A model generated the notes under the pieces. The model was not told where the DNA came from. It ran no database searches and saw only the letters and a list, made by a program, of their open reading frames with translations. Of a DNA stretch of 64,000 nucleotides, positions 2,807-54,652 are shown one piece after another. Position 1 is the stretch's first letter, and the number at the start of each line of letters is the position of its first letter. A program made the position numbers and the translations under genes. The stretch spans positions 124,001-188,000 of IMG/VR virus record IMGVR_UViG_3300031251_000001, one strand, 5' to 3'.

Positions 2807-2816
2807 GATAGCTCCA

Positions 2817-3681: not shown

Positions 3682-4712
3682 ATTTGTCCCTCCTTTACGT
3701 ATCCAGGATTAAGCTCTATGCCGATAGCGTGACAATTTGATCGCAATGCGGCGACCAGAGTAGTACAACTTCCCGCAAACGTGTCCAGTACCGTGGGACG
3801 ATCGATCGCGGTCGTCTTGCAGCTGCACGACTTTGTCCAGCCCGCAGTGTCGTAACACAATACCAGTTGACCATCGATCTGTCTCTTGTTTTTCTCGATG
3901 ATGCGGGTGTACTGGGTTCCGCAGCGCCCGCAACAGCCGTGCTGAGACACGGCGGCAGACAAGATCTTCATCGGCAAGTTAAGCGTAAAGCGGGCGTGGT
4001 GTGTCGTCTTGGGTGGTAGGGCCTTGGGTGATTTGTTGATCGGCACTGTCCACACTGTCCGCAGGCGCCGGCAACTCGTCGCCATGTTCATCGACTCGTG
4101 CAGGCGGGCATTGCCGCGTACCAGCATCTCGCGGTGATCCAGGGCCTTGGGGTTGGACTTCCGCAGCCGGCACTTGAGAGTCGAGGCTTCCGCTGAGCCG
4201 ATAGCATCGTAGAAGTAGTCATCGGTCTTGGTGAGCATGAACAACGTCTGGTGAGCCGTCGTCGGTCGGGCCACGTTACCGGAGGCGACGGCCGTGGGGT
4301 TGTAGACGATGATCTCGGAGCGAATGGTCCAGCCCTGCTTCAGGGCACCCAGGGCGATCCGCCACGGCATCCCCAGGAGGGATTGTCGCGGGAGACCAGT
4401 GATGCGGTTCCCCTGCTGTTGAGTGATGTCCTTGGAGAACTTGGTGTCATCGGTATACGTATCGCCGATGCACAACCATAAGGTGCCATCCGGACGTAAC
4501 ACTCGCCAACAGTCTCCTAGGAACCGCATCATGGCTCCCACATGGGATTCCAAACAATCTTCTTGCCCTATCTCCTTGCTGGCGTGCTTGCCGTGACTGT
4601 AACGGCGGAGCCCCCAGTAGGGCGGCGACGTGATCAAAACGTGAATCGAATTGCTCTTGATCTTCTGGAGTTGATCAAAGACGTTACCCACGAGGAGTTG
4701 GTGAGTCAGCAT
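3621..4712 (-). CDS. DNA N4-cytosine/N6-adenine methyltransferase, beta class
   Basis: LITSPPYWGLR catalytic motif near the N-terminus; VLDTFAGSCTT SAM-binding motif and IGIELNPGY near the C-terminus; internal CxxC insert. Start moved to 4712 because the longer ORF start lies inside a terminator. Confidence 0.92.
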   Translation of the reverse strand: MLTHQLLVGNVFDQLQKIKSNSIHVLITSPPYWGLRRYSHGKHASKEIGQEDCLESHVGAMMRFLGDCWRVLRPDGTLWLCIGDTYTDDTKFSKDITQQQGNRITGLPRQSLLGMPWRIALGALKQGWTIRSEIIVYNPTAVASGNVARPTTAHQTLFMLTKTDDYFYDAIGSAEASTLKCRLRKSNPKALDHREMLVRGNARLHESMNMATSCRRLRTVWTVPINKSPKALPPKTTHHARFTLNLPMKILSAAVSQHGCCGRCGTQYTRIIEKNKRQIDGQLVLCYDTAGWTKSCSCKTTAIDRPTVLDTFAGSCTTLVAALRSNCHAIGIELNPGYVKEGQIWLRQERGQLKNAREKDVSA

Positions 4713-6134: not shown

Positions 6135-6467
6135 TCAGAACGGTACCTGAGCTAGTTCCTTCTTGCGTCGTTCGCGAGCTGCCTTACGTCTGGCCTGCAG
6201 CTGGTAGTATTTCTCGTCTTCGTGGCCCTTGGAGCCGTTACAGACCTTGCAGAGAAGCTGGACGTTCTTCTTGGCGTGCTGGCGATAGTAAAAGGTGATT
6301 CGTTGATCCGATGACATCTTCCGGTGGTGTTTATTACCTCGCGGCTTGATCACATCGATTTCGATCTTCTCCGTCGTCCCACACCGCTTGCACTTACTAC
6401 CCAGGATCGCGACCAGCTCCGCCCGTCTCACCTGCGCCCGTCTGCGGTCCTGCTTCGACATTCGCAC
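6135..6467 (-). CDS. HNH-like endonuclease (first catalytic His apparently replaced)
   Basis: CKRCG..EIDVIKP...NVQLLCKVCNGSKG; the canonical DHI reads DVI (gat gtg atc). Confidence 0.7.
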   Translation of the reverse strand: MRMSKQDRRRAQVRRAELVAILGSKCKRCGTTEKIEIDVIKPRGNKHHRKMSSDQRITFYYRQHAKKNVQLLCKVCNGSKGHEDEKYYQLQARRKAARERRKKELAQVPF

Positions 6468-11790: not shown

Positions 11791-13653
11791 GTTTGACCTT
11801 CTTCTTGAGACCGTGGATGGTCACAAAGAGAACGAACTCGTCACGTGTCGTGATGACGTGGTAGTCACGACGCAGGGTGTTCTCATTCTCCTGTGTCCAC
11901 TCCATGTAGCCCAGACGACGTGTGTGGTGACCGGGCGGCTTCACGTCCACTTTGATCCACTGGGGGTTGTTCATGGTGTGCTTTCTAATAATGCCACTTG
12001 GCGCCGTTTGGCGAGCAGGAAGTGGCGAACTTGCTCTCGAATATGCCCAAGACTGATCAAGGATGTCCGCGAGGCGTCTCAGCACTCGGACGGCACTTGG
12101 GAGCCCTGCACGACAGCGCTGCATGGATAAGACCTACTCGGGATCTACCTTCGCTTTCGGCTCGTCCTTTTCGGTGGTGCGTAGTTGTTCCACCAGTTCT
12201 TCATTCATTTTCTGCAGCTGGGCATTGTGCTTCTTGGTGTTGATGAGCTCGCTGGCGAGAGCTAGGACCAGGTTGTCGCCGGTCAGGTCTCGCCACTCTT
12301 CACCATGTCGCTGCGCCCGGAACTTGCGGTGAGCTGACGGCATGATGACGCGGTACTTACCGTCCGCGATGTCAATCATGTCATCGGTGCAGACGAGTTT
12401 CTTCTCGGCCACGCTTCCTCCTTCAGGCAATACGCTTGCCGTGCTCATCGACTTTGGGATCGATGCTGAAGTCACCCACGGTGTTACCGTTGGTGTCGAT
12501 CAGCTTCTTGTTTTCGAGCTTTTCGCCGGCCAGGATGGCGGCAGAAACACTCTTGACGATCTTGTCGACTTCCTTCTTGGGGTTACCAACGTAGGCGTCG
12601 TTTTCGGTGCTGAAGTAGATTACTACTTTCATAATGGCCCTTCTGGGGGTTTAGCGTTCTTGAGCTCGTTGGCACACTTGATCATGTGATTGGCCATTTT
12701 GATGGCACTCTCAGGCGACAACGAGAGCCAGTCCATAGAGATAGGAAATTGCAACATCACCCTGCCCTTCTCTGGCACAGCGAAAATCGAGACGGTGTGT
12801 TCACCAGCCTCACTACGCATGGCAGGGTTGTTCTTCTTAGCCAATTCCAGGTCGTTCTGCTGGTAGATCAGTTTGACCACGTGGTCGAATGCCTTGTAGT
12901 CGGCCTTGCTGAGCTGGAGGGTGCCGTCGTCCAGGTTCTTGGCGTCATGCACCTCCAGCTTGAGATCCACCACGGGAGATTGCGTGCTGTCATACGTGCC
13001 CCAGGAGATCATGCCGTCGATGATGGCGTGATTGTTGGGATCCTGGAGCTGGCGACGCAAGGCGATACGCGCAGCTGGCAGGCTGGGTCCTTTGATGGAC
13101 ACCAGCCCGACCGCGTAGTCACCGTTACGGAGCTTCTTCTTAACGAAGACAGGGAAGAACATGGCTACTCCTCATTGGCGATACGATTGAGCAGGTCAAG
13201 TAAAGCCTGCTCGACCGCGACTCGTATCTCCAGTTTAACGTCCTCGGTCTGTGGTTCAGGCTGGACCAAGGGCGAACTGGTGATGTGAAGGACGTAACCC
13301 TGCCCCAGCTTCTGGTAGCTGTAGTCGAGACGCGGGACGCCGAGGGGCTTGGGTTCCTTGCGCTCGGGCCGATTGAGGATCTTCATTTCCTCTTTGGTGA
13401 CGCAGCGATGGATCTGCAGCGTCTTCTGTGCCCAGCCAAGCCAGCGGTTGAACTTATCACGGCGTCCCGCCATGAGGAAGTCGTCCATCTGGTCGCACAT
13501 GTAGAGGACGTGTTGGAGGTCGTCAGCGATCCGGGTGGCGTCCTCGTGCTGGTGCGGCACGTCAGGCGCGCCGGCGCAGCGCGACAGCAGATTCGACTTG
13601 GCCACTCGTCGCATGACGTCGACGATCTTGTGGCCGTGCTTATTGGAGATCAA
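11787..13653 (-). other. run of small/medium hypothetical genes (12134..12475, 12423..12632, 12629..13162, 13165..13653 and a small ORF near 11787-11975)
   Basis: consecutive minus-strand ORFs with overlapping or adjacent stop/start codons and GGAG RBSs; no recognisable family. Confidence 0.65.
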
Positions 13654-14417
13654 TACTGGCTTACCTCCGACATGAAGCGTTCGTCAGCGGCGTGAATGAA
13701 CGCTTTGAACAGGTTGATGTCCAGGGCCGAGCTGGTCTCAGAGTGAGGGTGCCACTGGACGCCAATGCAGAACCAGAGGGGATCGACAGGCTCGATCGCC
13801 TCGATCACGCTGTCCAGAGCCATCGCACAGACCTTGAACCCCGGTCCCGTCTTGTGGACGGCCTGCGAGTGATAACTATTGACCCGGATCTCGCCCGGCT
13901 GGTCGTAGATCTTATCGAGCTGGGTCTTGGGGAGGATGTTGATCGCGTGACGGTGCGGGCCGCCAGTGATGTCCTTGTGCGGCAACGCCTTGGGCATATC
14001 TTCAGCGATGTAGGCGTAGTTGGTGCCGCCCGTCACCAGGTTGAGTTCCAGCATCCCGTTGGCAATCGCCAGGATCGGGAGCTTCTTGCTGACCGCGTAC
14101 TGGGCCAGGGCAAAATCAAAATCCTCCTTGATCTTGTTCATTTCCCTGCCGGAGGGATGTGTCAATTGCTTGGTTCGCCTCTGACTGATGCAGTCGGGCG
14201 AGCCGGCCAGGATGATGCCATTCAGGCGATCAAGGAGGCCGTAGTCCATGTACTCGAGCGCAACAGGAGCCAGGAGAATCGGGCTTCCTTCGGCCTGGTT
14301 GACGCAATCGATATAGCCGGCATGCAGACGGGTTTGAGCCCCAGCGATCTTCCCCGCCGGCATATAGTCCAGGTTAATTCCAATCAGTGGTCGCACGTTA
14401 CCAGCCTTTCTCTTCAA
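13650..14417 (-). CDS. gamma-glutamyl-gamma-aminobutyrate hydrolase / peptidase C26 family protein (class I GATase fold), catalytic Cys absent
   Basis: RPLIGIN, LDRLNGIILAG, LPILAIANGM (canonical GICRG), EIRVNSYHSQAV, IEAIE, IGVQWHPH (canonical WHPE). Confidence 0.88.
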   Translation of the reverse strand: MKRKAGNVRPLIGINLDYMPAGKIAGAQTRLHAGYIDCVNQAEGSPILLAPVALEYMDYGLLDRLNGIILAGSPDCISQRRTKQLTHPSGREMNKIKEDFDFALAQYAVSKKLPILAIANGMLELNLVTGGTNYAYIAEDMPKALPHKDITGGPHRHAINILPKTQLDKIYDQPGEIRVNSYHSQAVHKTGPGFKVCAMALDSVIEAIEPVDPLWFCIGVQWHPHSETSSALDINLFKAFIHAADERFMSEVSQY

Positions 14418-14700
14418 CGTGTTTCGTCAGGATGTCATAGAGCTCTTTGTTATAGGGGTTGCTCCAGCGGTCTGGGCCAACGTCGAAGACAACCACCTTG
14501 TCGCGGCACCCGTTCGGTACCGCACTAATGAAATGAGGCTGCAGGAGGACAATGTGATCTGCCCACATGGCGTTCCAGTGGATAGCGTCGGGGCTGGTGT
14601 GAGCACCGGCCGCGATCGCCTGGTAACCCTTGGCGTGCAAGACACGAGTCAAGCACACCGAGCGACTGTGACCATACTGGCAGACGCAGAGGAACCTCAT
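14398..14700 (-). CDS. low-molecular-weight phosphotyrosine-phosphatase-like protein
   Basis: MRFLCVCQYGHSRS: CX5R(S) P-loop right after the N-terminal beta strand; WADHIV; DVGPD. Confidence 0.65.
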   Translation of the reverse strand: MRFLCVCQYGHSRSVCLTRVLHAKGYQAIAAGAHTSPDAIHWNAMWADHIVLLQPHFISAVPNGCRDKVVVFDVGPDRWSNPYNKELYDILTKHVEEKGW

Positions 14701-15125
14701 GCCGCCACCGTGTTCCTTCCTTTGACTGTGGACCCGAGCAGGATGGCGACCTTACCCCAGTTGCAATCGTTGATGGCATCTTGCAGGGTATCGCGGAAGT
14801 GGGCAAGGACCTCCAGCTGATCTTCACCGCGAGCCAGGATTCTCAGCTCGTGACCGTCGAAGGAGATTGCAAAGGGGAGAGGCGTCAACGGGGCCATGAC
14901 CGGCGGTTCCATCCCTAATTCCTTACGGATAGAGATAAATATGTCGGGCATGCGCTGCTCGACGAACTCCAGAAAGTCCTTTTTGTCGACACGGCGATCA
15001 CCTGGTTTGCCATCCACGGTGGGGAGCCGTGTTCCCTTGAGCAAGCCACCATCGATCCACTTGCTCGTGGTTCGCGGGGCCACACCGCACATTTTCGAGA
15101 TGTCACCAGTCGTTAACTGATCCAT
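14697..15125 (-). CDS. excisionase/MerR-like HTH DNA-binding protein
   Basis: LTTGDISKMCGVAPRTTSKWIDGGLLKGTRLP..GDRRV; resembles the N-terminal HTH of planctomycete regulators (TTGQVAKICKVAPRTVSKWFDSG, recalled). Confidence 0.8.
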   Translation of the reverse strand: MDQLTTGDISKMCGVAPRTTSKWIDGGLLKGTRLPTVDGKPGDRRVDKKDFLEFVEQRMPDIFISIRKELGMEPPVMAPLTPLPFAISFDGHELRILARGEDQLEVLAHFRDTLQDAINDCNWGKVAILLGSTVKGRNTVAA

Positions 15126-15136
15126 GGAATAATCCC

Positions 15137-15532
15137 TTATTGCAGGTTGACGCCGTACTTCAGCGGCTTGGCTCGATCAACAAGATGGTTGATGAATCCT
15201 TCCGCCTCCTCGACTGACCGAGGTTGTGGGTCGCAGTTTACCAAGACGGCACTCCAGTTGTCAGTACCAGCTTCACAGCAGAAGGCGTAAAACCTGACTT
15301 TGTGCTCTAGGGTACGGTTGGAGTGTTCCAGGTCGGAAGAGACGATCACGCAGCCCCGATGCACGTCCAGCGTTTCATTCTGACCGTGCGTTTTAACGGA
15401 GCCATCACTGTTATTAAAGAACAAAGGCACGCGTTCACGTGCCTGGTCCAGATCCATGTCCGTGTCAATCAGCGAGGTCGACCCGTCAGAGCGGACGACC
15501 TCAGTGATGTGATCACTGTCACGCAGGTTCAT
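15137..15532 (-). CDS. hypothetical protein
   Basis: start MNLRDSD overlaps the upstream TGA (ATGA). Confidence 0.65.
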   Translation of the reverse strand: MNLRDSDHITEVVRSDGSTSLIDTDMDLDQARERVPLFFNNSDGSVKTHGQNETLDVHRGCVIVSSDLEHSNRTLEHKVRFYAFCCEAGTDNWSAVLVNCDPQPRSVEEAEGFINHLVDRAKPLKYGVNLQ

Positions 15533-16011
15533 GCTGCTTCTTTCGCGAAGTAGTTCTTGAGCAGCATCTCGACGTAGGCCTTCACCCACCTGCCGGCGGT
15601 CGTACGGTAGTTGAAGTCGTACTTCTTGAAGGCCGTCGTCCGGATCCACTCGCGGAGGTCCTTGCCGAACTCCTGCGACCGGGCGTACCAGTCACAGACC
15701 ATCTCGGCGACGGCGATCTCCGGCATGTGTTCGATGCCGCCCCAGAACTCGGGGTGATGATCATTGGTGGAAACGTGCTGCTGAATGGCAGCACGCAGCT
15801 TGTCGGTATTGACGTCATCGCCTACGTGGAGATATTCCCACTCCACGCCGAAGAACTTGGAAGTATCGTGACTGAAGCCGCGGGCGATGAGTAACCGCCC
15901 GAACTCGACACGACCCTGGGCGACTAAGCGTTTGCCCAGCAGGGAGCAACCGCCTCTGACCAGGTGAATATGCCGGGTCAGATTTTCCAAGTGTTCATCG
16001 AAGGACAACAT
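15529..16011 (-). CDS. HD-like phage protein (DUF5662-like)
   Basis: HDTSKF, HVSTNDHHPEF, AEMVCDWYARS. Confidence 0.7.
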   Translation of the reverse strand: MLSFDEHLENLTRHIHLVRGGCSLLGKRLVAQGRVEFGRLLIARGFSHDTSKFFGVEWEYLHVGDDVNTDKLRAAIQQHVSTNDHHPEFWGGIEHMPEIAVAEMVCDWYARSQEFGKDLREWIRTTAFKKYDFNYRTTAGRWVKAYVEMLLKNYFAKEAA

Positions 16012-17946
16012 CAGGCCTCCTTATGTTAAGGGATCTCAGCTCAGCGATGACTTGCCGGAACGCTTCCTGGCCGGTTTGCTGGCGACCGATGGCGATGCAG
16101 CGAAGTCCCGTCTTGTTCTGAGTGAATCGCTTCGAGGACTCCTTGTCAGCGAAGCGGCAATAGACGCGAAGTACGCAGTCCGTTGTATAGAGTTTGTGCA
16201 TCGAGAGGGTCATCGGCCCGTAGGCCGTGTTCAACTCGATATTGACATCCCCCAGGTAGATGGATTCATGGTCCAGATGTGATCGGTGGTCGCCAATCAT
16301 CGTGTAGATGTGACTGACCAGCATCTTGCGGCACCGTCTGATCTGGGGCTTTCTCATTTGGGATTATTCTCCACGTAGTCGATAAGTTGGTCCGCCAGCT
16401 TAGCAATGGGGATGCAGAACTGGCGGGAGTTGACATTAGCGATGATACCGTGGTTGGTGATGTGGACGACGATCTTGTATCCGCGATGCACGGCCTGGGC
16501 CGCGTGCGCGACGAAGTAGAGGTTGACAGGCTGGTGTTCCAGGAGCTCCACCCTGATCGGCGGGCGCTTCACGGCGTTCACACTCCTGCCTTCCTCAACC
16601 GTGCGTTTCTTGGGTGCGGTCATGGGTTCCTTTAATCGTGTTGACGGATGAGACGGCCCACGTCGCGGCCGAGGTTGTAGACCCTTTCATCGGGACCACC
16701 GTGGTTACCGGCGAAGATCCCCGATTGAGAGAACGGACACTCAGGGTCATCGACTCCGCTGGTGAAGTAACATACCGTGTCGGTCGGGCACTCAAACAAA
16801 TAGGCCAGGTAGACAACAATGGCCTTGTAGATGTAGTCAGCAGCTGCCAGCCGTTCGCTGGAGAGGGTGCTCTGACTATTAACCACGCAGCGCTGGATGG
16901 CTGGTTTATCGAGCAGGAGTGCAGTAGCAGGGCAGCAATAACCGTCACCGATGAAAATGCCCCAGGAGAGTTTGAGACCGGCTTTGTCGGCAGCGGCCTT
17001 GGCTTGGTCGTAAAGTTCTTGTGCGGTGATCATGGCATCCTTAAACGAAGATGTACTCAATGGCACTCCAGCACATGAAGTAGCAGGGTTTACCTCGGTA
17101 CCGGGATTTATGGTAAGAGACGTGGTAGTCGTCTTTGAGGTGCAAGCCCTTCTCTGGTCCGATACTGTAGCCCATGCCTTTGATGACATCCTGGGCGTCG
17201 CAGTGCTTGAGGAAGGTAGCACGGCTGATATCGCGAGCTTCGTCACACATCTTCTGGATCGACGGGCCGTGTCCATTGACGCAGTTGGTCAGGAAGTGGA
17301 ACTTACCCCGCTTTACGGGTAGTCTTCTTCCGAGTTGAAGTGGAGGGCTTGGTGGGCTCCGGAGCAGCCACGACGAAGGTAATGGTGACCTCATCGTCGT
17401 CGTTGTCGGTGTTGACAGAGTGAACTCGTTCATAACACAGGTCCAAAGGGTACAAGTCGTGAATCATGGCTTCGAGGTCCATGTCGTCGACATTCTGGAG
17501 GGAGTTGCAGATGTGATCGATGACCGCTTGACGATCGAAGGTTTCAGTCCGGAGAGGAGAATCGACCAACAACCGTCTGAGTTTGCCGGCGTTCTCCTCG
17601 TTGACGGAGATGTCGTAGCGGTCCTTGCCAAGTGGCAAGAACTCAAACCAGCAACCGTCGGCCGCGATCTTCTCCATGATGCGGATGGCCTTGCGGACAC
17701 CGTTGACCTGAATATGGAAAGTCATTTGGGTTTCTCCAGGTGGACGATGCAGATCCCCAGGGCGTCCACGACTTTGGGGACGCTCTTGGGGTTGTCGTGA
17801 ATCATGCACATGCGTTTGGGGTTGCTGGGGTGGGAGGAGTACGAGCGGGCACAATCGGCACAGCTGGGTTGATCAATGAGACTTGGAGACTGCACGCGAT
17901 ACGTGCGGTCGCGCTTTGGCTGCAGCTTTGGCTTGGACAGCGGCAT
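15995..17946 (-). other. run of hypothetical genes (15995..16357, 16354..16623, 16632..17033, 17041..~17310, 17303..17725, 17722..17946)
   Basis: consecutive overlapping minus-strand ORFs with RBSs; no assignable function. Confidence 0.65.
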
Positions 17947-18409
17947 AGAGCTCCTTGTGTTTCATCAGGTACCGGATTGCTGCACGAAGAACAGAGATGT
18001 TGTCCTTCAGGAGTCCCAGCCCTCGATTACACGAGTCGCATAGCACGCCTCTTACTTTTCCAGTGACGTGATCGTGGTCGACTGGAAATGTTTTGTGCGC
18101 ACCATAGTGGCCATCCTGTACACGATCTTTAGTTCGGCAGATCGCGCACTTGCCACCTTGAGAGACGAGAATGTTATCGTAGTCATCCAATGTAATTCCA
18201 TATTTCTTAGCGAATCGCAGTTTACGCGCATACCTTCTCTCTCGCTCGCGATACCCAGGTTCGTTCTGTCGTCTCCAACGTGAGCGAGCTATACCACCTT
18301 CTGAGTGGCACTTCTTGCACCAAGATTGACCCGATGTTTTGCTGTACCTCGGAAAGAACTCGTCGGGGTGTTTAGACAGTTTGCACTTAGTGCAGGTTAT
18401 CTTTTTCAT
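17873..18409 (-). CDS. endonuclease VII-family (His-Me finger) homing endonuclease
   Basis: N-terminal CTKC..CKKC; YGITLDDY..GGKCAIC..PVDHDHVTGKVRGVLCDSCNRGLG. Confidence 0.9.
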   Translation of the reverse strand: MKKITCTKCKLSKHPDEFFPRYSKTSGQSWCKKCHSEGGIARSRWRRQNEPGYRERERRYARKLRFAKKYGITLDDYDNILVSQGGKCAICRTKDRVQDGHYGAHKTFPVDHDHVTGKVRGVLCDSCNRGLGLLKDNISVLRAAIRYLMKHKELYAAVQAKAAAKARPHVSRAVSKSH

Positions 18410-18479
18410 ACTGACAGTTTACAATAAAACCTGTCAGTGTGAATACCAACAGCCAGGGGTAGCGAGGTGCGGGCCATGT

Positions 18480-18488
18480 TGCTATACT
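18480..18488 (+). promoter_or_regulatory. extended -10 promoter element TGcTATACT
   Basis: matches TGnTATAnT, about 55 nt upstream of the plus-strand gene at 18542. Confidence 0.45.
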
Positions 18489-18541
18489 CCCTCTGTTGAC
18501 AACCCGTTGTGGGTCGTCGGTTATGTTGTGAAAGGATTCAG

Positions 18542-18946
18542 ATGTTCAACGCTACGAATACCAAAGCCCAGGCGATTGCCCAGACGCTGGATAAGAGTGT
18601 GCAGGGGTTCCTGCCCATCCTGATCATCGTGCAGATCATCGCTGCGGTACTGCCCGAGCTGATCAAGTGCTTCATCCCCAAGGACCCCGCCCAGGCCAAG
18701 GATTACGTCAACAAGCGTTATACCGCTGCCAACCATGGTGATCAGTATGGTGGCTACAACCCGGTCACAGTCAAGCGGGTCATGAAGCTGGTACGTAGCC
18801 AAGCCGCGACTCACGGGCACCACGACATGAGTGATCCCGCTGCTCGCGATGCCGCGATCAAGATGCTGGAAGACATCCGCACCAGCGACCCCCAGAGCAT
18901 GCAGGACGTCATGACAGAGACATACCAGTCACTGAAGCGCAACTAG
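18542..18946 (+). CDS. hypothetical membrane protein (one of two plus-strand genes)
   Basis: AAGGA RBS before ATG 18542; hydrophobic FLPILIIVQIIAAVLPELIKCF; fills a gap with no minus-strand gene. Confidence 0.75.
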   Translation: MFNATNTKAQAIAQTLDKSVQGFLPILIIVQIIAAVLPELIKCFIPKDPAQAKDYVNKRYTAANHGDQYGGYNPVTVKRVMKLVRSQAATHGHHDMSDPAARDAAIKMLEDIRTSDPQSMQDVMTETYQSLKRN

Positions 18947-19415
18947 CCGGCGTGACGGGTGCAACAGGCAACAGGGTCATTGGTCCATCGACCAGTGACC
19001 CTGTTAGTTTTTGTATCACCTGCAGCATGGGTTTCTGGGGCTGCTGACGATGCAGCTCTTTGAGACGTGTTTGCGTGCGACCCATGTTGTAGGCAATAGT
19101 CCTGATCTGACGTCGCGAGGTCATCCCGCCCCGAATCTCCTTCATTGCCGTCGCCAGGATACAGCCATAGGTGTGGCGGTGGGAGTGGAAGTAGAACAGG
19201 CTGAGTGACGGTGGTAGCCACCACTCACCGATCGTGGCCCCAGCCAGACCACCGACGTTCTTGTCTTTGGAGAGATAGGCAATCACCCGGTCGGTATAAG
19301 CGATGATGACTGCCTTTTCCGGGAGATCCATCGTTGCCTCGACGTACTTGGCGAAGAGGCTCAGGCAAGTGCTACGCATGTCGAACGCCACATCACAATT
19401 ATCTTCAGCAAACAT
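18909..19415 (-). CDS. hypothetical protein
   Basis: long ORF; start uncertain (track ORF 18909..19595 overlaps the upstream gene). Confidence 0.55.
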   Translation of the reverse strand: MFAEDNCDVAFDMRSTCLSLFAKYVEATMDLPEKAVIIAYTDRVIAYLSKDKNVGGLAGATIGEWWLPPSLSLFYFHSHRHTYGCILATAMKEIRGGMTSRRQIRTIAYNMGRTQTRLKELHRQQPQKPMLQVIQKLTGSLVDGPMTLLPVAPVTPASCASVTGMSLS

Positions 19416-19454
19416 GATCAGATCGTTGATGTTGAGCGTTATCAATTCGACCCC

Positions 19455-19470
19455 CAAAATACGTATTTTG
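19455..19470. promoter_or_regulatory. dispersed 16-bp palindrome, copy 2
   Basis: exact match; 3 nt after the TAA at 19474. Confidence 0.9.
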
Positions 19471-19473
19471 CGG

Positions 19474-19959
19474 TTAGGCCGCTTCTTCCCGCCTGACGCG
19501 GATGTTGACATCCTCCATCCAGGTGACCAGGTTCGCCACCAGCTTCTCGTCAGCGGGTGTCTTAGTGTCTTCGACGTTATCGATGCTGCGGGCAATGGCC
19601 CTGACCTGCTCGATCGTGACGGTCGTCTTGCGGTAGACCGACTTGGGCTTCTTCTCGCCCCGTGGCTTCCGCTCCTTAGCGACCTTAGCTGGCTTCTCGG
19701 GCTTAACGATCAGCTCCTTGACGCCGCCCATCTGGCCGAGCGTGTGGATACAGTTGCCACAGGCCGCACGGCGGAACTTGGTGTCCTTGAAGTCGTAGAC
19801 GATGGTGCCAGTAGAGTCGAGACGACCGTGGCAGAGACCGTCGTCGCCGTTGACCTCCAGAATGATGCCGTTAGGCGCGGTGAGATCGTGTTTGCATTCT
19901 GGGCAGGTAGCGAGCGGTTTGTCAGCGAAGAGATAACGAACAGGCAGTTGTGCGGCCAT
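19474..19959 (-). CDS. zinc-ribbon hypothetical protein
   Basis: CPEC and CGNC pairs; Lys-rich C-terminal half. Confidence 0.7.
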   Translation of the reverse strand: MAAQLPVRYLFADKPLATCPECKHDLTAPNGIILEVNGDDGLCHGRLDSTGTIVYDFKDTKFRRAACGNCIHTLGQMGGVKELIVKPEKPAKVAKERKPRGEKKPKSVYRKTTVTIEQVRAIARSIDNVEDTKTPADEKLVANLVTWMEDVNIRVRREEAA

Positions 19960-19991
19960 CCTTGGCTCCCCTGTGGTGTGATCCACAGACT

Positions 19992-20327
19992 TTACTGAAC
20001 CTGGCATGGCTGTGCAAGGCGACCTTGGTAGGCCAGAGTCATCAGCCGGCTGCACAGGCCCATCTGGCGGAGCAGGGAAGGCATGGGCTGCTTGTGGTTG
20101 ATGTTGAAGGTGAACTTACCGGTCTCCGAGTCGAAGATCACGAGTTTGGGGATGCTGTCGGGCAGCGGGCGACCACGGTAAGGTGCGAAATCGACGGCAT
20201 GCCAGACGGTGCCGTGGAGACAAGGATCCGGCTCGACAGGAGTCAACCCGATCGACTTGCAGTCTTGGTGGAAATCGAAGTAGGTGATGAAATGGTGTTC
20301 CAGCATCATGCGCTCCATGAAAGACAC
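19992..20327 (-). CDS. hypothetical protein
   Basis: 111-aa ORF. Confidence 0.55.
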   Translation of the reverse strand: MSFMERMMLEHHFITYFDFHQDCKSIGLTPVEPDPCLHGTVWHAVDFAPYRGRPLPDSIPKLVIFDSETGKFTFNINHKQPMPSLLRQMGLCSRLMTLAYQGRLAQPCQVQ

Positions 20328-20328
20328 A

Positions 20329-20358
20329 AGCCCAGGATGACGGGGGTCATCCTGGGCT
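20329..20358. terminator. 13-bp perfect stem-loop, probable terminator
   Basis: AGCCCAGGATGAC-gggg-GTCATCCTGGGCT; T-rich tail on the minus strand. Confidence 0.6.
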
Positions 20359-20389
20359 CGCAGGTAGGGGAGACGGTCCGATAAAGTAG

Positions 20390-20830
20390 TTAATGCACTT
20401 GCGACATTTTTTCAAGTTCTTTGATAGTGACCATGCCGAGTGAACCATCGGGTTTACGGTATTGTACCACAGGCTCGCCGTTCCTGGCTGATAGTGCCAG
20501 ATCGAAGCCTTGCGGTTGGCCACCTGTCAGTGTTTTGTTGCGGTGAATGCCGACTACCGGGCCTTCATTCTTGGTCACGTACATGGAGACCATGCCCTGA
20601 GTCTTATTGTCGGTGATCCAGACGCCCGTGCAGTCGCCCTGCGACGTGATGACGATACCGCCTACCTTGATCTGCTTGGCCTCGATCGTGTCAGCGACGA
20701 GGCAGGCAGCTCTTACTCGTTCTTCCTGGCTGGCGGTGGCCGTAATATGGGCCATGATCAGGCCGATGAATAAAGTAGAGAGCAAAATAACGATCAACTG
20801 GCCTCGCGGGCTGTTTTTGGAAAAAGGCAT
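20390..20830 (-). CDS. membrane-anchored/secreted hypothetical protein
   Basis: N-terminal hydrophobic helix; AAGGAGG RBS. Confidence 0.75.
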   Translation of the reverse strand: MPFSKNSPRGQLIVILLSTLFIGLIMAHITATASQEERVRAACLVADTIEAKQIKVGGIVITSQGDCTGVWITDNKTQGMVSMYVTKNEGPVVGIHRNKTLTGGQPQGFDLALSARNGEPVVQYRKPDGSLGMVTIKELEKMSQVH

Positions 20831-20877
20831 GTCGACCTCCTTGTTAGGTTAAGTTCTCTCATCTTCATCTAATACAG

Positions 20878-20906
20878 ATTGTAACGCGATCGCCTGATCG
20901 TGTCAC
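20878..20906 (-). promoter_or_regulatory. sigma70-like promoter GTGACA-N17-TACAAT
   Basis: correct 17-nt spacer, in the intergenic gap upstream of 20830. Confidence 0.55.
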
Positions 20907-20920
20907 CAAGGTGAGCCTTG

Positions 20921-21430
20921 TCAAGGCTTGGGCGGATTGGCGAACACGGCGGTGCTGTAGTAGTCCCCGTCATCGCCTTTGGTGGTGGCAATTCCGACGA
21001 ACTTATAGTCGCCGAGCATGTTCCTGTTGTGCCCTGGACTGGCTGCCCAGGCTGCTACCGTCTTCTCCGGTTTGGTCATTTGAGCGATGTTTTCCGCTAC
21101 TGCTGACCACGCAAACCCAGCTGCCTCGACTCGCTGCTCGGGCCGGGAACCATCGGTGCCGATGTGATCCAGGCGAGCGTGTTTAGCACAGTCATCAGAC
21201 TGCCGCTGGGCTGCTTTGTCCAATTGTGAGTTCTCGATCAGAGCTGCCCACCCGTTCGCCTGGCGATACGCATTGATCTCCTTCAGCAGAGTAGGCGGCT
21301 CGGAGACAGCGCTGTTCACCATGGGCATCGGTGAGAATGATAAAAGATCCTGGGTTGGCCGAACGGTCGGCAGGCTGGACAAGGATACCAGCGTCAGACA
21401 GATCAGATAGAGCTCTTTCATCAACAACAT
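20921..21430 (-). CDS. secreted CAP (SCP/Tpx-1/Ag5/PR-1) domain protein
   Basis: signal-like N-terminus; INAYRQANG, LDKAAQRQS, DHIG, AENIA, WAASPGHNRNML. Confidence 0.88.
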   Translation of the reverse strand: MLLMKELYLICLTLVSLSSLPTVRPTQDLLSFSPMPMVNSAVSEPPTLLKEINAYRQANGWAALIENSQLDKAAQRQSDDCAKHARLDHIGTDGSRPEQRVEAAGFAWSAVAENIAQMTKPEKTVAAWAASPGHNRNMLGDYKFVGIATTKGDDGDYYSTAVFANPPKP

Positions 21431-21683
21431 GGGTTTCCTCCTTGACGGGTTCAATGGGCTTGTTCAGATGGCAGTTCTTGAACTTCTTCCCGCTGCCACA
21501 CAAACAAGGATCATTGCGACCGATCCGTGGTCGCTTCTCTTTCAGGATCGCCTGGTACTCTTGGCGAGCCAGGTGTTCCTTACGCTCCTGGGGAGTCAAC
21601 GGGCGACGCTGCTTGCGTGACCTGCCGCCTGAGAGGGCGAGCAGAGAGATGGCGGCAGCGACCCCGTTATCGAGTCCAAACAT
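21195..21683 (-). CDS. SEC-C motif protein
   Basis: RIGRNDPCLCGSGKKFKNCH. Confidence 0.75.
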   Translation of the reverse strand: MFGLDNGVAAAISLLALSGGRSRKQRRPLTPQERKEHLARQEYQAILKEKRPRIGRNDPCLCGSGKKFKNCHLNKPIEPVKEETHVVDERALSDLSDAGILVQPADRSANPGSFIILTDAHGEQRCLRAAYSAEGDQCVSPGERVGSSDRELTIGQSSPAAV

Positions 21684-21686
21684 AGT

Positions 21687-22178
21687 CTACTCCACTACGT
21701 ATTGCATGTGATAGGCGTCTTCCTTGGTGTCCTCGTAGTATTCAGGGATGACCTCGGTCGCGAGGAACTTCAGACGCTGGAAGAAAAGCTGGGCCGTGAG
21801 GTTCGTTTCACGCACGTGCAGCTCGCATTTGTTTCGCTTGTTGGGGGTCAGTCGTGAGGTGAGGCAGCCGATGAGAGCTCGACCGTAGCCGCGAAGCCGA
21901 TAGCGTGGGTGGACGGTCAGGCAGTGCAGCCAGAAGGATTTGCCGCGTCGCTCGTAAAAGAGAGAACCGACCACCTTCTTACCCTGAAGCTCCAGCACCA
22001 GGGCGGCACAGGATTCATTCTCCAGGAAACCAGCCATGACCTCTTCGGACCAGGGATCTGGATAGACCATCTGTTCCAACTTGGCGACGACTGGCCTATC
22101 TTGCGGGATCATCTCACGGATGATCGGCTTGAGCTTTTCACGAGCCACGGTGATCTCCATACCACCAGGTTCAGACAA
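21687..22178 (-). CDS. rimI: ribosomal-protein-alanine N-acetyltransferase-like GNAT
   Basis: YPDPWSEE, LTVHPRYRLRGYGRALI (acetyl-CoA loop), LHVRETNLTAQLFF, YYEDTKEDAYHMQY. Confidence 0.8.
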   Translation of the reverse strand: MSEPGGMEITVAREKLKPIIREMIPQDRPVVAKLEQMVYPDPWSEEVMAGFLENESCAALVLELQGKKVVGSLFYERRGKSFWLHCLTVHPRYRLRGYGRALIGCLTSRLTPNKRNKCELHVRETNLTAQLFFQRLKFLATEVIPEYYEDTKEDAYHMQYVVE

Positions 22179-22235
22179 ACGGCCACGATCACTCGTGGCC
22201 GCTCCAGTCTAACGCATCTGCGTCTGGTGAACTAC

Positions 22236-22808
22236 TTAATCAGAGGGCCGACGTTGCGTCAATGCCAGTGCCCGAAGCAGTGAAGACCGCCTGACCGCCG
22301 GTTCTGTTGTCGTTACGGTGGTCACAGTGACATCAGGTTTACTCTCGGTATTGGAAGCCGCCGGCGTCACAGCCTTCTTAGGGACTGGTGCTTGCTGCTT
22401 CTTAATCTCAGGAGCGGGCATCGTTTGCTTCTGTACGCTGGGTGCCGGAGCGGGAGCTGCGGTCGACCCGGAACATGAAGATCCTGTGCAGGACGATCCA
22501 CTGCAACCTGTGCCGCGATGTGCGAAGAGCTTCGAGATGCAGCTGGTGTGAGCTGCCTTGGCGTGGCCCGTGCAGCTGGATCCAGTGCAGGCTGCGCTAG
22601 TGACGGTGGTGGTCACGGTCTTCGTGATCGTGGCACCTGTGCAAGAACTACCCGTGCAATGACTGGCGTGAACACGACGAGCGTGCCCGGTGCAAGCAGA
22701 ACCGGTACAAGCGGAGCCTGTGCAGCCGGCGGCCTGGACCGTGGCTGGCTTGGCGGCAGGAGCGTCCGAGACGCCTGCCAAAAGACCGACTAACAAAATC
22801 GAATACAT
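22236..22808 (-). CDS. secreted Cys-rich repeat protein
   Basis: signal peptide; about nine C(T/S)GS(S/A)C(T/S)G-type units; Pro/Ala/Thr-rich tail. Confidence 0.8.
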   Translation of the reverse strand: MYSILLVGLLAGVSDAPAAKPATVQAAGCTGSACTGSACTGHARRVHASHCTGSSCTGATITKTVTTTVTSAACTGSSCTGHAKAAHTSCISKLFAHRGTGCSGSSCTGSSCSGSTAAPAPAPSVQKQTMPAPEIKKQQAPVPKKAVTPAASNTESKPDVTVTTVTTTEPAVRRSSLLRALALTQRRPSD

Positions 22809-23023
22809 GCTGACCTCCTCTGGGCGAAAACACGATCAACCTAGACCGCATCACTAACCCTATTGTTCCTAGATAGTATCGTCCGCCTGGTAGCACGAAT
22901 CAAGGCTACCAGACTTCTCCTGTCACCCGCACCTTGTCTTTGCTTTCTCCGCACGGGACAAGACAGCCATCCCGCTTTGGCGCGAGCCCGCTCGTACGAC
23001 AGACATACTTGAGCCCGCTCGTT

Positions 23024-23086
23024 CGTTGTGCTGCCGAGTGCCCACCAGGAGCACCCTAAGCTGCTGTAGGCGTTGCGGTCGCCCCG
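23024..23086 (-). ncRNA. candidate novel structured RNA element, copy 1 of 4
   Basis: CGG GGCG ACCGCAA CGCC UAC A GCAGCU UA GGGUGCUC CUGGU GGGCACUC GGCAGC ACAACG; covarying stems. Confidence 0.75.
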
Positions 23087-23178
23087 AAGCAATTGCGAGG
23101 TCGGGTGTTGAAAGGACCCTTCCGTGCACACCCTTAGAAAGCATGACGAGAATAGGTACTAACCGACCCCGCTCTCAC

Positions 23179-24303
23179 TTATCTACTGACCCGTCCTGAT
23201 TTCAGGATGTTCGGGTCAAGGCTGGTGGAAGCACTCGACAGCTCCGGCACCCTCGCGAAAGGATTCCAGCTGATGATGCCGTCATCACCGCGAAGCATGC
23301 CGTACCAGGGCCTGGGGTTCTGAATGTCGTAAGCGTGCCGCTGGGTGTCCCGGTGGCAATCCACACAAGAAGCCTTCGAGGCGGAGAAGAAGGCCCCATT
23401 GTACCTGGGTGGCACGATCGAGTCCCGTTCGGTCGTTGTCGCCATACCGCACTCTATGCCGTCCTGGACCAGCCAGGGCTCTCCCAGGGCAGGACGGAAG
23501 GGCATGGTCTTGAGTGTCTGCTTGGAGACCTCCTTCTCGATCTTAGGCATCTCCACGACTAACGCAGTGCGTGGCTTAAAGAGTCGAGGGTGAAGTGACG
23601 GGAAGATCATCTTGAGCGGGGAGGACGAGGGCTTACGATACTCGCCCAGCACATAGGTGAGCTCCGTCTCGTTGCGAACGGGTCGATAGACGTTGACGGC
23701 CCAGTGCTCAGCACCTGTTTCGTTGTCGGATTTGGTGCGAGTACGGATCTCGAAAGGGAGCTGGTCGCCGTCCGTGAACTTCTGGTAGAGGATCTCCACC
23801 AGGGTCGTTCCCTGGGGGAAGTCCCAGCTGACGGCGTCAGCGTACCGCTTCGATTCAGGCCGTCGCTCGGGACCGACGCTAATCTTGATGTTTCCAGTCT
23901 GAGGTAAAAGAAGGGCCTTCACGCTGGGGTAACCAGGTGGCAGTCCCGCTGTCCGAACCCACGGTTCTTCGTTGTTCGGTGTCCCGGCTGATTCGACTTG
24001 TTTCTCCATCGAGATATTACGGCCGGTGTAAACGAGGACCACGTGATCGGTGTTGTAGCGACTGGCGTAGACAGGATTGGATTGCGTAATGGTGCCTTCC
24101 TGGAACACCGTCGGCAGCGTGGTTTCGTCGTAGAACATCAAGTCGGGTGAGTTGAGGATCTTCTGCAGCTTCTCGTCATCGGTCTTGGGTAAGGTGCTGC
24201 GAACCTTGGCTTCTTGTTCCTTGGACATGTACCGCCACGGTGGCTCAGCCACGGCGGCGGGGACCAGGAACAGACACAGAGCTAAAGTGATGAGACGCAT
24301 CAT
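23179..24303 (-). CDS. secreted hypothetical protein with one CxxCH motif
   Basis: signal peptide MRLITLALCLFLVPAAVA; SCVDCHRD near the C-terminus. Confidence 0.75.
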   Translation of the reverse strand: MMRLITLALCLFLVPAAVAEPPWRYMSKEQEAKVRSTLPKTDDEKLQKILNSPDLMFYDETTLPTVFQEGTITQSNPVYASRYNTDHVVLVYTGRNISMEKQVESAGTPNNEEPWVRTAGLPPGYPSVKALLLPQTGNIKISVGPERRPESKRYADAVSWDFPQGTTLVEILYQKFTDGDQLPFEIRTRTKSDNETGAEHWAVNVYRPVRNETELTYVLGEYRKPSSSPLKMIFPSLHPRLFKPRTALVVEMPKIEKEVSKQTLKTMPFRPALGEPWLVQDGIECGMATTTERDSIVPPRYNGAFFSASKASCVDCHRDTQRHAYDIQNPRPWYGMLRGDDGIISWNPFARVPELSSASTSLDPNILKSGRVSR

Positions 24304-26059: not shown

Positions 26060-26644
26060 CTATCTCACGAAAGGGAGAACGATGCCAGCTTGGTTTTGAT
26101 ACTTGCCGCGTCGATCGGCGTAGCTGGTCGTGCAAGTCATACCGTGAGCGTGATCCGATTGCGTAAGTAATCTTGCACAGTCGGCTCGCAGGAAGATGAT
26201 TTGAGCGATCCCTTCGTGGGCGTAGATCTTCGCTGGCAGCGGCGTGGTGTTGCTGATCTCGATGGTGATCTTGCCTTCCCACTCCGGCTCGAGCGGGGTG
26301 ACATTGACGATCAGGCCGCAGCGAGCATAGGTACTCTTGCCGACACAGATCGCCAGGATGTCGCGAGGAATCTTGAACACCTCGAACGTCTCCCCCAGCA
26401 CGAAGCTGTTGGGCGGGATGACGCAGGTGTCACCCTCCATGCTCACGAACGACTTGGGGCTGAAGTTCTTCGGATCTACGATCTCGCCGTGGACGTTGGT
26501 GAAGACCTTGAACTTGTTACCCAACCTGGCGTCGTAGCCATAGCTGGTTACACCGTACGAGATGACACCTTTTGACATCTGCTCTTTGATGAACGGTGTA
26601 ATGCTGATCTCTTTCTCAATTTGCCAATCTGCTAAGACGCCGAT
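26060..26644 (-). CDS. dcd: dCTP deaminase
   Basis: [59 protein letters not shown]. The conserved N-terminus GVLADWQI lies upstream of the first ATG (26578) and begins at ATC 26644. Confidence 0.95.
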
Positions 26645-54639: not shown

Positions 54640-54652
54640 GGTGACCTCTAAG

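What the first reader, a model, noticed from the sequence alone, without database searches (positions are those of the whole stretch)
13650..24303. Evidence that this is a large phage of Planctomycetota
Seen: the architecture is phage-like (unidirectional dense genes, homing endonucleases, tail-like proteins, tRNA, nucleotide enzymes) with no bacterial core genes. From recalled family knowledge, the C26-like protein, the RimI-like GNAT (ETNLxAQLFF...YEDTxEDAY), the TTG..K.C.VAPRT.SKW HTH and the signal-peptide Cys-rich and CxxCH proteins look like planctomycete, possibly Gemmataceae, versions. Phages of this phylum are poorly described, so much of the gene content is likely uncharacterised.
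Basis: inference. Interest (0 to 1): 0.6.

Follow-up and report, generated by a model that had tools for sequence, protein, structure and literature searches.

The report
Jumbo phage of soil Gemmatales planctomycetes
The window is part of a complete, about 214-kb genome of a previously undescribed tailed jumbo phage from rhizosphere soil, and five of its borrowed genes point to one uncultured family of Gemmatales (Planctomycetota), a phylum whose phages are almost unknown, as the host.

Summary

**It is a phage.**
- The window is bases 124001-188000 of a single 214,229-bp IMG/VR virus record. CheckV rates it 100% complete, and its ends overlap by 126 bp.
- 260 of my 278 gene calls lie on one strand.
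- It has a large terminase, an HK97-fold major capsid protein (found here by fold search) and a baseplate wedge protein.
- It also has its own DNA polymerase, primase, DnaB-like helicase, ligase and a bacterial-type RNA polymerase beta/beta'.

**What the flagged stretch is.** Window 13650-24303 is an accessory-gene block: a C26-like protein, an HTH protein, DUF5662, an endonuclease VII homing nuclease, a CAP-domain protein, a SEC-C protein, a RimI-like GNAT, and secreted Cys-rich and CxxCH proteins.

**Host evidence.**
- The 80 best C26 relatives among 185,579 species genomes are all Planctomycetota.
- The phage copy nests inside one Gemmatales subclade (support 100/99; AU test p 0.008).
- dCTP deaminase, tRNA-Met, a secreted Cys-rich protein and the GNAT each point to the same 15-genome GTDB family.

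**Limits.**
- No CRISPR spacer match was found.
- "Gemmataceae" is probably one family off.
- "Tail-like proteins" in the window were not confirmed.
- Host assignment remains indirect.

The parts
2087..2878 (-). thymidylate kinase
   Evidence: Pfam PF02223, E 6e-31
3154..3561 (-). HNH_3 homing-endonuclease-like gene
   Evidence: PF13392 match at window 3229-3345, E 8e-12
3621..4712 (-). DNA methyltransferase
   Evidence: phrog_67, E 4e-35
6135..6461 (-). HNH endonuclease-like gene
   Evidence: PF01844 match at window 6219-6392, E 1.4e-4, at the cut-off
13650..14417 (-). C26 / class-I glutamine-amidotransferase-like protein, host-derived. The nucleophile Cys is replaced by Ala119 and the triad Glu by His.
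   Evidence: PF07722, E 4e-41. The 80 best genome loci are all Planctomycetota. It nests in a Gemmatales subclade with support 100/99 and AU p 0.008. Active-site alignment to 3FIJ and 7D4R.
14398..14700 (-). 100-aa protein with a CX5R(S) P-loop motif (low-molecular-weight phosphatase / ArsC-like signature)
   Evidence: Motif CQYGHSRS read in the translation. No Pfam hit, so the assignment is inference only.
14697..15125 (-).
   Evidence: PF12728, E 2e-7; sequence
15529..16011 (-). DUF5662 protein
   Evidence: PF18907, E 3e-23
17873..18409 (-). endonuclease VII / HNH-type homing endonuclease. Its codon usage is atypical, and my gene caller missed it.
   Evidence: PF02945, E 9e-24; sequence
18542..18946 (+). 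the only well-supported + strand gene of the flagged stretch, function unknown
   Evidence: Codon score; no Pfam or NCBIfam hit
20921..21430 (-). secreted CAP/SCP (YkwD-like) domain protein with a signal peptide
   Evidence: PF00188, E 3e-17; NCBIfam YkwD and DalA-like, both below cut-off
21195..21683 (-). SEC-C motif protein. Its 3' part overlaps the CAP gene in another frame.
   Evidence: PF02810, E 6e-10; tblastx shows conservation of the motif with G004
21687..22160 (-). RimI-like GNAT acetyltransferase
   Evidence: PF00583, E 1e-10. TIGR01575 scores 77.7 bits, below the 86.4 cut-off. 8 of the 13 best hits in Gemmatales come from G001's 15-genome family.
22236..22808 (-). secreted Cys-rich repeat protein (CTGSxCTG repeats) with a signal peptide
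   Evidence: Translation; no Pfam hit
23179..24303 (-). secreted 374-aa protein with one invariant CxxCH (putative haem c site); function unknown
   Evidence: Sequence. Only 3 homologs in 5.8 billion proteins. CxxCH is invariant among them. The fold prediction failed.
26060..26578 (-). dCTP deaminase, host-derived
   Evidence: PF22769, E 2e-32. 72-75% nucleotide identity to G001, G002, G003 and G005. All 6 organism-named hits among the global top 120 are Gemmatales or Gemmataceae. 14 of 15 genomes of G001's family score 247-266 bits, against 240 bits or less in 300 other Planctomycetota.
33609..34139 (+). HNH_3 + AP2 homing endonuclease
   Evidence: PF13392 and PF00847
35021..36220 (-). ATP-dependent DNA ligase
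   Evidence: phrog_114, E 9e-63
41525..42025 (-). secreted Cys-rich protein whose C-terminal 105 aa match chromosomal genes of Gemmatales
   Evidence: 76-78% nucleotide identity to G001 and G564; 66-70% amino-acid identity
46273..47328 (-). GT4-type glycosyltransferase
   Evidence: PF20706, E 5e-6
48409..49137 (-). TylF-family O-methyltransferase
   Evidence: PF05711, E 2e-86; 67-74% nucleotide identity to several other Gemmatales genomes
50646..51836 (-). DNA methyltransferase domain protein
   Evidence: phrog_9133 and phrog_6263
54652..54724 (-). tRNA-Met (CAT), the only tRNA of the genome
   Evidence: ARAGORN; Rfam, 61 bits. 91% identity over 69 nt to G001, G003, G564 and G565, against 86% to G328.

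Best explanation
The window is the central part of the complete genome (about 214.1 kb of unique sequence) of a tailed double-stranded-DNA jumbo phage from rhizosphere soil.

**Shown**
- The genome encodes a large terminase, an HK97-fold major capsid protein and a contractile-tail-type baseplate wedge protein.
- It encodes its own DNA polymerase, primase, DnaB-like helicase, RecA-like and SbcC-like proteins and a ligase.
- It encodes a bacterial-type RNA polymerase beta/beta' plus a sigma-like protein.
- No integrase was found.
- The flagged stretch 13650-24303 is an accessory-gene block lying on the - strand like the rest of the genome. It mixes orphan genes, a homing endonuclease and genes captured from cells.
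- Five loci have their closest cellular relatives in one uncultured family of the order Gemmatales: the C26-like protein, dCTP deaminase, tRNA-Met, a secreted Cys-rich protein and, more distantly, the RimI-like GNAT.

**Inferred**
- A member of that family, or a close relative, is the host, and the phage picked up these genes during infections.
- The captured genes serve takeover. dCTP deaminase plus thymidylate kinase feed dTTP synthesis. The tRNA and the RimI-like acetyltransferase act on translation.
- The signal-peptide proteins (CAP domain, Cys-rich repeats, CxxCH) are exported to the host envelope or periplasm, for example for superinfection exclusion or wall remodelling.
- The C26-like protein cannot work as a cysteine-dependent amidotransferase, because it and all its planctomycete relatives lack the nucleophile.
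For: **Phage**
- Virus record, CheckV 100% complete, with a 126-bp end overlap.
- TerL: Pfam GpA_ATPase, and tblastn E 3e-44 to phage terminases.
- Capsid protein g085: 520 homolog clusters, AF2 pLDDT 83, Foldseek probability 1.00 to HK97-fold capsids.
- Baseplate wedge, phrog_6.
- DNA polymerase and primase; DnaB, RecA-like, SbcC and RNAP.
- No integrase.

**Host**
- C26: a scan of 185,579 species genomes returned 80 of 80 best loci in Planctomycetota. The two with other labels lie in genomes that GTDB places in Gemmatales.
- C26 tree: the phage sits inside clade G001/G002/G003/G565 with support 100/99, and the AU test rejects exclusion at p 0.008.
- dcd: 72-75% nucleotide identity to the same genomes. 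All named global top hits are Gemmatales or Gemmataceae. The family scores 247-266 bits, against 240 or less elsewhere in the phylum sample.
- tRNA-Met is 91% identical to that clade's tRNA.
- The secreted protein at 41525-42025 is 76-78% identical at nucleotide level to G001 and G564.
- GNAT: 8 of the 13 best Gemmatales hits come from the same family.
- GC content fits: 57.6% in the phage against 52.6-56.7% in that clade.
- A 79-kb relative with 32 genes in the same order sits in another Gemmatales MAG and matches that MAG's 39-44% GC.
- The same phage occurs in runs from three further rhizosphere studies.
Against: - No CRISPR spacer match among about 575 repeats from 40 cas1-adjacent regions of Gemmatales genomes.
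- No prophage or integration site was found.
- Host inference rests on horizontally acquired genes, which record past rather than present hosts.
- dcd is conserved. Two solved non-planctomycete enzymes still score 212-221 bits, so its margin is modest.
- The GNAT signal is only 43-46% identity and favours a different sub-branch of the family than C26 does.
- Tetranucleotide similarity is not discriminating. An unrelated Salmonella phage gives r 0.76.
- The relative contig in MAG G533 could be there through composition-based binning.
- No out-of-phylum genome set could be searched with the genome search.
- Portal and sheath proteins were not identified.
Confidence: 0.8

Rival explanations
1. 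It is a jumbo phage, but of a different soil phylum. On this reading it picked up a handful of Gemmatales genes by occasional transfer in a shared habitat, or the transfers ran from phage to bacteria.
For: - No spacer or prophage link was found.
- Most genes carry no taxonomic signal.
- TylF-like and GNAT genes match other branches of Gemmatales best, which shows mixed histories.
Against: - Five independent loci converge on one 15-genome family.
- The C26 family is chromosomal in more than 570 planctomycete genome stretches, and the phage copy is nested with a long derived branch, so the transfer ran from cell to phage.
- GC content fits that clade.
- A syntenic relative is binned with another Gemmatales genome.
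Confidence: 0.15
2. It is not a virus but a large plasmid or another mobile element that carries some phage-like genes.
For: - The assembly path is circular.
- Many genes are methyltransferases and accessory genes.
- Pfam models for capsid, sheath and portal found nothing.
Against: - Terminase.
- HK97-fold capsid protein with 520 homolog clusters of uniform length.
- Baseplate wedge protein.
- A structural module of 32 genes in the same order shared with a relative.
- CheckV completeness of 100% as a virus.
- No plasmid replication or conjugation family appeared in any scan.
Confidence: 0.03

Closest known systems
Uncultured relative G533:C47 (79,124-bp contig in a Gemmatales MAG) and Logan contig L149
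   Same: C47 shares 32 genes in the same order with phage genes g056-g107 (baseplate, capsid, RNAP, sigma-like) at 24-48% amino-acid identity. L149 shares 5 scattered genes, including the CxxCH protein at 51%.
   Different: GC is 43.9% against 57.6%. There is no nucleotide similarity, and the accessory genes of the window are not shared. Both are fragments without names or descriptions.
Jumbo phages with their own multisubunit RNA polymerase (phiKZ-like Chimalliviridae, Bacillus phage AR9/PBS2) - comparison from established knowledge
   Same: Genome over 200 kb, own beta/beta'-like RNA polymerase and own replisome.
   Different: Here beta and beta' are bacterial-type and are found directly by Pfam and PDB sequence searches (E 1e-48 to 1e-52). 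They are arranged as a beta + beta'-N-half fusion plus a separate beta'-C-half. The Chimalliviridae marker (chimallin) was not tested. TerL is not close to theirs: the best hits are Arash and Vibrio phages.
Salmonella phage Arash (OQ632216) and Vibrio phages D69/D181/D148
   Same: Best terminase matches among 50,697 deposited phage genomes, at 26-30% identity over 58-65% of the protein. A sigma-like protein is also shared with Arash at 27%.
   Different: Nothing else in Arash's first 50 kb matches. Hosts, genome organisation and size differ.
Phage-ZRK32, a chronic 21.9-kb phage of a Phycisphaerae planctomycete (PMC10945688)
   Same: One of the few sequenced phages tied to Planctomycetota. It also carries a glutamine-amidotransferase auxiliary gene.
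   Different: Ten times smaller, about 30-nm particles, chronic release, and a host in a different class.
Huge phages from metagenomes (Al-Shayeb et al. 2020, PMC7162821)
   Same: A genome over 200 kb recovered from metagenomes, circular assembly, tRNA and many accessory genes.
   Different: I did not test membership in any of their named clades. The one soil huge-phage paper I searched (PMC11748809) does not mention Planctomycetota or Gemmata.

Membership tests
Caudoviricetes (tailed dsDNA phages) | Large terminase subunit | tested here: met
   PF05876, E 4e-10; tblastn E 3e-44 to annotated phage terminases; genome 36378-38351, + strand
Caudoviricetes (tailed dsDNA phages) | HK97-fold major capsid protein | tested here: met
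   g085, genome 85303-86256: AF2 pLDDT 83 / pTM 0.77; Foldseek E 1e-10, probability 1.00, TM 0.53-0.62 to HK97, D3 and phiXacJX1 capsids. Pfam capsid models alone found nothing.
Caudoviricetes (tailed dsDNA phages) | Portal protein | tested here: inconclusive
   PF07230 found nothing and there was no PHROG hit. The candidate, g094 (815 aa), is conserved in the relative but unassigned.
Caudoviricetes (tailed dsDNA phages) | Tail or baseplate proteins | tested here: met
   phrog_6 baseplate wedge, E 2e-17, genome 62007-63659. Sheath model PF04984 was negative.
Jumbo phage (genome over 200 kb) | Complete genome longer than 200 kb | tested here: met
   214,229 bases with a 126-bp end overlap; CheckV 100%
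Phage of Planctomycetota (Gemmatales) | Captured genes whose nearest cellular relatives are in that lineage | tested here: met
   C26, dcd, the 41525-42025 protein, GNAT
Phage of Planctomycetota (Gemmatales) | CRISPR spacer of the host matching the phage | tested here: inconclusive
   About 575 repeats from 40 cas1 regions gave no match of 22 nt or more. Most arrays were not sampled, and the order-wide DNA search scores only 2 candidates per genome.
Phage of Planctomycetota (Gemmatales) | tRNA similar to the host's tRNA | tested here: met
   91% over 69 nt to G001, G003, G564 and G565, against 86% to another Gemmatales genome. No out-of-phylum control, so the weight is low.
Phage of Planctomycetota (Gemmatales) | Demonstrated infection | not testable with these tools
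   Needs culture, proximity ligation or single-cell data.
Peptidase C26 / class-I glutamine amidotransferase | Family HMM and fold-level similarity | tested here: met
   PF07722, 141.6 bits; PDB 3FIJ, E 3e-23
Peptidase C26 / class-I glutamine amidotransferase | Catalytic Cys-His-Glu triad | tested here: not met
   The Cys position holds Ala119, and A/G/S/D in 22 relatives. His is kept. Glu is His in the phage's closest relatives.
RimI (ribosomal protein S18 alanine N-acetyltransferase) | Score above the curated equivalog cut-off | tested here: not met
   TIGR01575 scores 77.7 bits against a cut-off of 86.4. GNAT fold is met, so 'RimI-like' only.
dCTP deaminase | Family HMM and close similarity to solved enzymes | tested here: met
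   PF22769, 113 bits; PDB 4dhk, E 8e-65
Chimalliviridae (nucleus-forming jumbo phages) | Chimallin shell protein and PhuZ tubulin | not tested
   No search was run for them.

The most novel reading that the evidence does not exclude
This genome and the syntenic contig G533:C47 may represent an undescribed family-level clade of jumbo phages specific to Gemmatales planctomycetes. On this reading they transcribe their genes with a complete bacterial-type RNA polymerase of their own (a beta + beta'-N-half fusion, a separate beta'-C-half and a sigma-like factor). They would also export a set of cysteine-rich and haem-motif proteins into the unusual planctomycete envelope.
Probability: 0.35. Interest if true: 0.75.

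Novelty: new member of a known kind. Interest (0 to 1): 0.55.

Why it matters
Planctomycetota are abundant in soil and water and have an unusual cell plan, yet a 2025 review of the phylum mentions phages only once. The only sequenced planctomycete phage I found in these searches is a 21.9-kb chronic phage.

A complete 214-kb genome with a well-supported link to one Gemmatales family gives:
- a concrete target for isolating hosts and phages;
- a source of genetic tools for a hard-to-manipulate phylum;
- a case of a phage carrying a bacterial-type RNA polymerase.

It is also a worked example of host assignment from several converging captured genes when spacers fail.

Tried and rejected
1. **CRISPR spacers.** Cas1 was found in 154 of 267 Gemmatales genomes. 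I fetched 40 cas1 regions holding about 575 repeats, and none matched the phage. This is not evidence against the host.
2. **24-nt exact match.** The match to G002:C40 lies in coding DNA with no repeats, so it is chance.
3. **Short matches at window 39357-39402.** These 86-94% matches in five genomes are a poly-Glu GAA/GAG tract.
4. **Tetranucleotide usage.** r is 0.76-0.84 to the G001 clade, but 0.76 to Salmonella phage Arash and 0.82 to a Planctomycetaceae locus, so it does not discriminate.
5. **Standard models for structural proteins.** Pfam models for capsid, T4 Gp23, sheath and T4 portal found nothing, and PHROGs gave no structural assignment beyond the baseplate wedge and a head-decoration-repeat protein among the roughly 40 non-window proteins scanned. 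The capsid protein was found only by profile search plus fold.
6. **ESM Atlas search of g094.** Its model has pLDDT 0.31, so the result is unusable.
7. **AF2 of the CxxCH protein.** With 4 sequences it reached pLDDT 37, which is unusable.
8. **TerL peptide scan of IMG/VR.** It found no close relatives.
9. **The listing of cluster members for organism names.** It returned none.
10. **Out-of-phylum controls.** I planned to use the 'Bacteroidales' and 'Alcaligenaceae' MAGs, but both turned out to be Gemmatales in GTDB, so no out-of-phylum control was available in the genome search.
11. **Window 1-12000.** No nucleotide match to the five closest genomes.

No alternative genetic code was used.

Full report
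**Context**

The window is bases 124001-188000 of a single 214,229-bp contig. The tools class it as an IMG/VR virus record with a CheckV completeness of 100%.

- The first 126 bases recur exactly at the end, and only the very last base differs. This looks like the k-1 overlap of a circular assembly path, which probably explains why IMG/VR lists the record as linear. Unique length is about 214.1 kb.
- GC content is 57.6%.
- A simple codon-usage gene caller gives 278 genes covering 93% of the genome, 260 of them on the - strand.
- ARAGORN finds one tRNA in the whole genome. Rfam, run on the window only, finds the same tRNA and nothing else.
- The DNA comes from a rhizosphere metagenome. Runs from three other rhizosphere studies hold short contigs that are 99-100% identical.

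**Is it a phage?** Yes.

- *Packaging and structure.* A + strand gene at genome 36378-38351 is a gpA-type large terminase. Pfam gives E 4e-10, and tblastn gives E 3e-44 to Salmonella phage Arash, with 24 further phage terminase matches at 21-30% identity. A baseplate wedge (gp6/J-like) protein lies at 62007-63659.
- *Capsid.* Standard capsid, sheath and portal HMMs and PHROGs failed. I therefore took the best-adapted mid-size gene upstream of the putative tail genes, g085 at 85303-86256. It has 520 homolog clusters of uniform length, about 310 aa. It folds with pLDDT 83 and pTM 0.77. It matches HK97-fold capsids with Foldseek probability 1.00, E 1e-10 and TM 0.53-0.62.
- *Replication.* The genome encodes a DNA polymerase (phrog_17, E 8e-77), a primase, a DnaB-like helicase, RecA-like and SbcC-like proteins and an ATP-dependent ligase.
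- No tyrosine integrase was found.
- Among 50,697 deposited phage genomes nothing is close. In Arash's first 50 kb only the terminase and a sigma-like protein match.

**The flagged stretch, window 13650-24303**

All genes are on the - strand except one. In order:

| Window coordinates | Gene | Evidence |
|---|---|---|
| 13650-14417 | C26-like protein | PF07722, E 4e-41 |
| 14398-14700 | 100-aa protein with a CX5R(S) phosphatase-type motif | no HMM hit |
| (between) | orphan | none |
| 15529-16011 | DUF5662 | Pfam |
| (between) | six small orphans | none |
| 17873-18409 | endonuclease VII homing nuclease with atypical codon usage | PF02945, E 9e-24 |
| 18542-18946 | + strand orphan | none |
| (between) | three orphans | none |
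| 20921-21430 | signal-peptide CAP/YkwD-like protein | Pfam |
| 21195-21683 | SEC-C motif ORF, overlapping the CAP gene in another frame | Pfam |
| 22236-22808 | signal-peptide protein made of CTGSxCTG repeats | no HMM hit |
| 23179-24303 | signal-peptide protein with one CxxCH | no HMM hit |

These assignments rest.

The CxxCH protein has only three homologs in 5.8 billion proteins. The one whose contig I examined (P0244) lies on a phage-like contig, and the CxxCH is invariant in all three. It therefore looks phage-specific rather than planctomycete-derived. Its fold could not be predicted.

Elsewhere the window carries thymidylate kinase, dCTP deaminase, several DNA methyltransferases, three more HNH genes, a GT4 glycosyltransferase and a TylF-type O-methyltransferase. 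I found no tail proteins in the window.

**Host: C26-like protein**

- A word search of 5.8 billion proteins found 201 relatives besides the phage's own copy; the best 119 listed are 46-59% identical, and the only one with an organism name is from Gemmataceae.
- I scanned one genome for each of 185,579 species with a profile of these. 576 stretches were confirmed and the best 80 kept. 78 are labelled Planctomycetota.
- The two exceptions, labelled 'Bacteroidales' and 'Alcaligenaceae', lie in genomes G565 and G328. Both belong to the GTDB order of G001, that is Gemmatales. So all 80 are Planctomycetota.
- In a careful maximum-likelihood tree the phage protein sits inside the clade G565/G001/G002/G003, with ultrafast bootstrap 100 and SH-aLRT 99.
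- An AU test rejects a tree that keeps the seven nearest bacterial sequences together without it (p 0.008).
- The phage branch is long (0.98), as expected for a captured gene.

**Host: dCTP deaminase**

- It is 72-75% identical at nucleotide level, and about 70% at protein level, to the dcd genes of G001, G002, G003 and G005.
- In the global word search, the six hits among the top 120 that carry an organism name are all Gemmataceae or Gemmatales.
- G001's GTDB family has 15 genomes held. 14 of them score 247-266 bits, while none of 300 other sampled Planctomycetota exceeds 240.
- The margin is modest. Two solved non-planctomycete enzymes score 212-221 bits.

**Host: further loci**

- tRNA-Met is 91% identical over 69 nt to a tRNA of G001, G003, G564 and G565, against 86% in another Gemmatales genome.
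- The secreted Cys-rich protein at 41525-42025 matches chromosomal genes of G001 and G564 at 76-78% nucleotide and 66-70% protein identity.
- The GNAT has homologs in 249 of 267 Gemmatales genomes. 8 of the 13 best are from the same 15-genome family, but at only 43-46% identity and from its other sub-branch.
- The TylF gene matches other Gemmatales best.
- Phage GC (57.6%) is near that of the G001 clade (52.6-56.7%) and below the 60-69% seen in most of the Gemmataceae and Isosphaeraceae loci examined.

**A relative**

The capsid profile hit one of the 267 Gemmatales genomes.

- Contig G533:C47 is 79 kb and shares 32 genes in the same order, from baseplate through capsid to RNAP, at 24-48% identity.
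- Its GC (43.9%) matches the 39-44% of that MAG's other contigs.
- This suggests a wider phage clade on Gemmatales, but binning by composition could produce the same picture.

**Negative or weak evidence**

- No spacer matched.
- Tetranucleotide correlation does not discriminate.
- No genome set from another phylum could be searched as a control.
- No direct physical link to a host exists.

I put the phage call at about 0.97, Planctomycetota at about 0.85, and Gemmatales at about 0.8, the figure I give for the explanation as a whole. The particular family is about 0.6.

**Comparison and novelty**

This is a jumbo tailed phage, a known kind. It has no close described relative, and its host lineage has essentially no described phages. 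I therefore file it as a new member of a known kind.

The most unusual feature lies outside the window, in the RNA polymerase genes:
- g100 (102635-107659) joins a bacterial-type beta (E 1e-52 to solved RpoB) to the N-terminal half of beta'.
- g096 (96994-100695) carries the C-terminal half of beta' plus a roughly 700-aa extension.
- These are the best-conserved genes shared with the relative, at 45-48% identity.

Noticed in passing
L006:2635-7659 (genome 102635-107659, -) and L185:494-4195 (genome 96994-100695, -): The phage carries a bacterial-type RNA polymerase. One 1674-aa protein joins beta (residues 80-925) to the N-terminal half of beta' (residues 1283-1672), with a roughly 350-aa insert that gives a weak, sub-threshold intein hit. 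A second protein carries the C-terminal half of beta' plus a roughly 700-aa extension. A sigma-like protein lies at genome 64530-65240.
   Followed up: partly
window 13650-14417 and alignment A1: The C26-like protein and all 22 aligned planctomycete relatives lack the nucleophile cysteine of class-I amidotransferases: they hold A/G/S/D where 3FIJ and 7D4R have Cys. This widespread planctomycete subfamily is probably not a cysteine hydrolase.
   Followed up: partly
L010 (CAYPJB010000307.1) and L023 (CAZESP010000022.1): Two binchicken MAGs labelled 'uncultured Bacteroidales' and 'uncultured Alcaligenaceae' in their record titles map to genomes G565 and G328. Both appear in the GTDB order of the Gemmatales genome G001, so the NCBI labels look wrong.
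   Followed up: partly
L189-L192 (G533:C47, 79,124 bp): A relative of the phage with 32 genes in the same order sits in a Gemmatales MAG of unusually low GC, 39-44% in the sampled contigs.
   Followed up: partly
L186:474-6344 (genome 114974-120844, +): A 1956-aa protein on the minority strand is built of repeated head-decoration / Ig-like domains (phrog_2647, E 2e-88, several stretches).
   Followed up: no
window 21195-21430: The SEC-C motif ORF and the CAP-domain gene are both open over about 236 nt in different frames. This is either a real overlap or a mis-set start or stop.
   Followed up: no
window 22236-22808: A signal-peptide protein consists largely of CTGS(S/A)CTG repeats, with no family match. 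My codon-based gene caller rejected it.
   Followed up: no
genome 1-126 and 214103-214228: The ends overlap by 126 exact bases but the last base differs, which probably explains why IMG/VR classes this complete genome as linear.
   Followed up: yes
window 14398-14700: A 100-aa protein carries a CX5R(S) phosphatase / ArsC-type P-loop motif but matches no Pfam model.
   Followed up: no
L149 (Logan contig SRR28981356_7694, 67.8 kb): Another one-directional phage-like contig shares five scattered genes with this phage at 31-51% identity. They include the CxxCH protein and the 740-aa orphan at window 44002-46224.
   Followed up: partly
window 44002-46224: A 740-aa orphan has no Pfam, PHROG or PDB sequence match, yet is conserved at 31% over 788 aa in the distant relative L149.
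   Followed up: no
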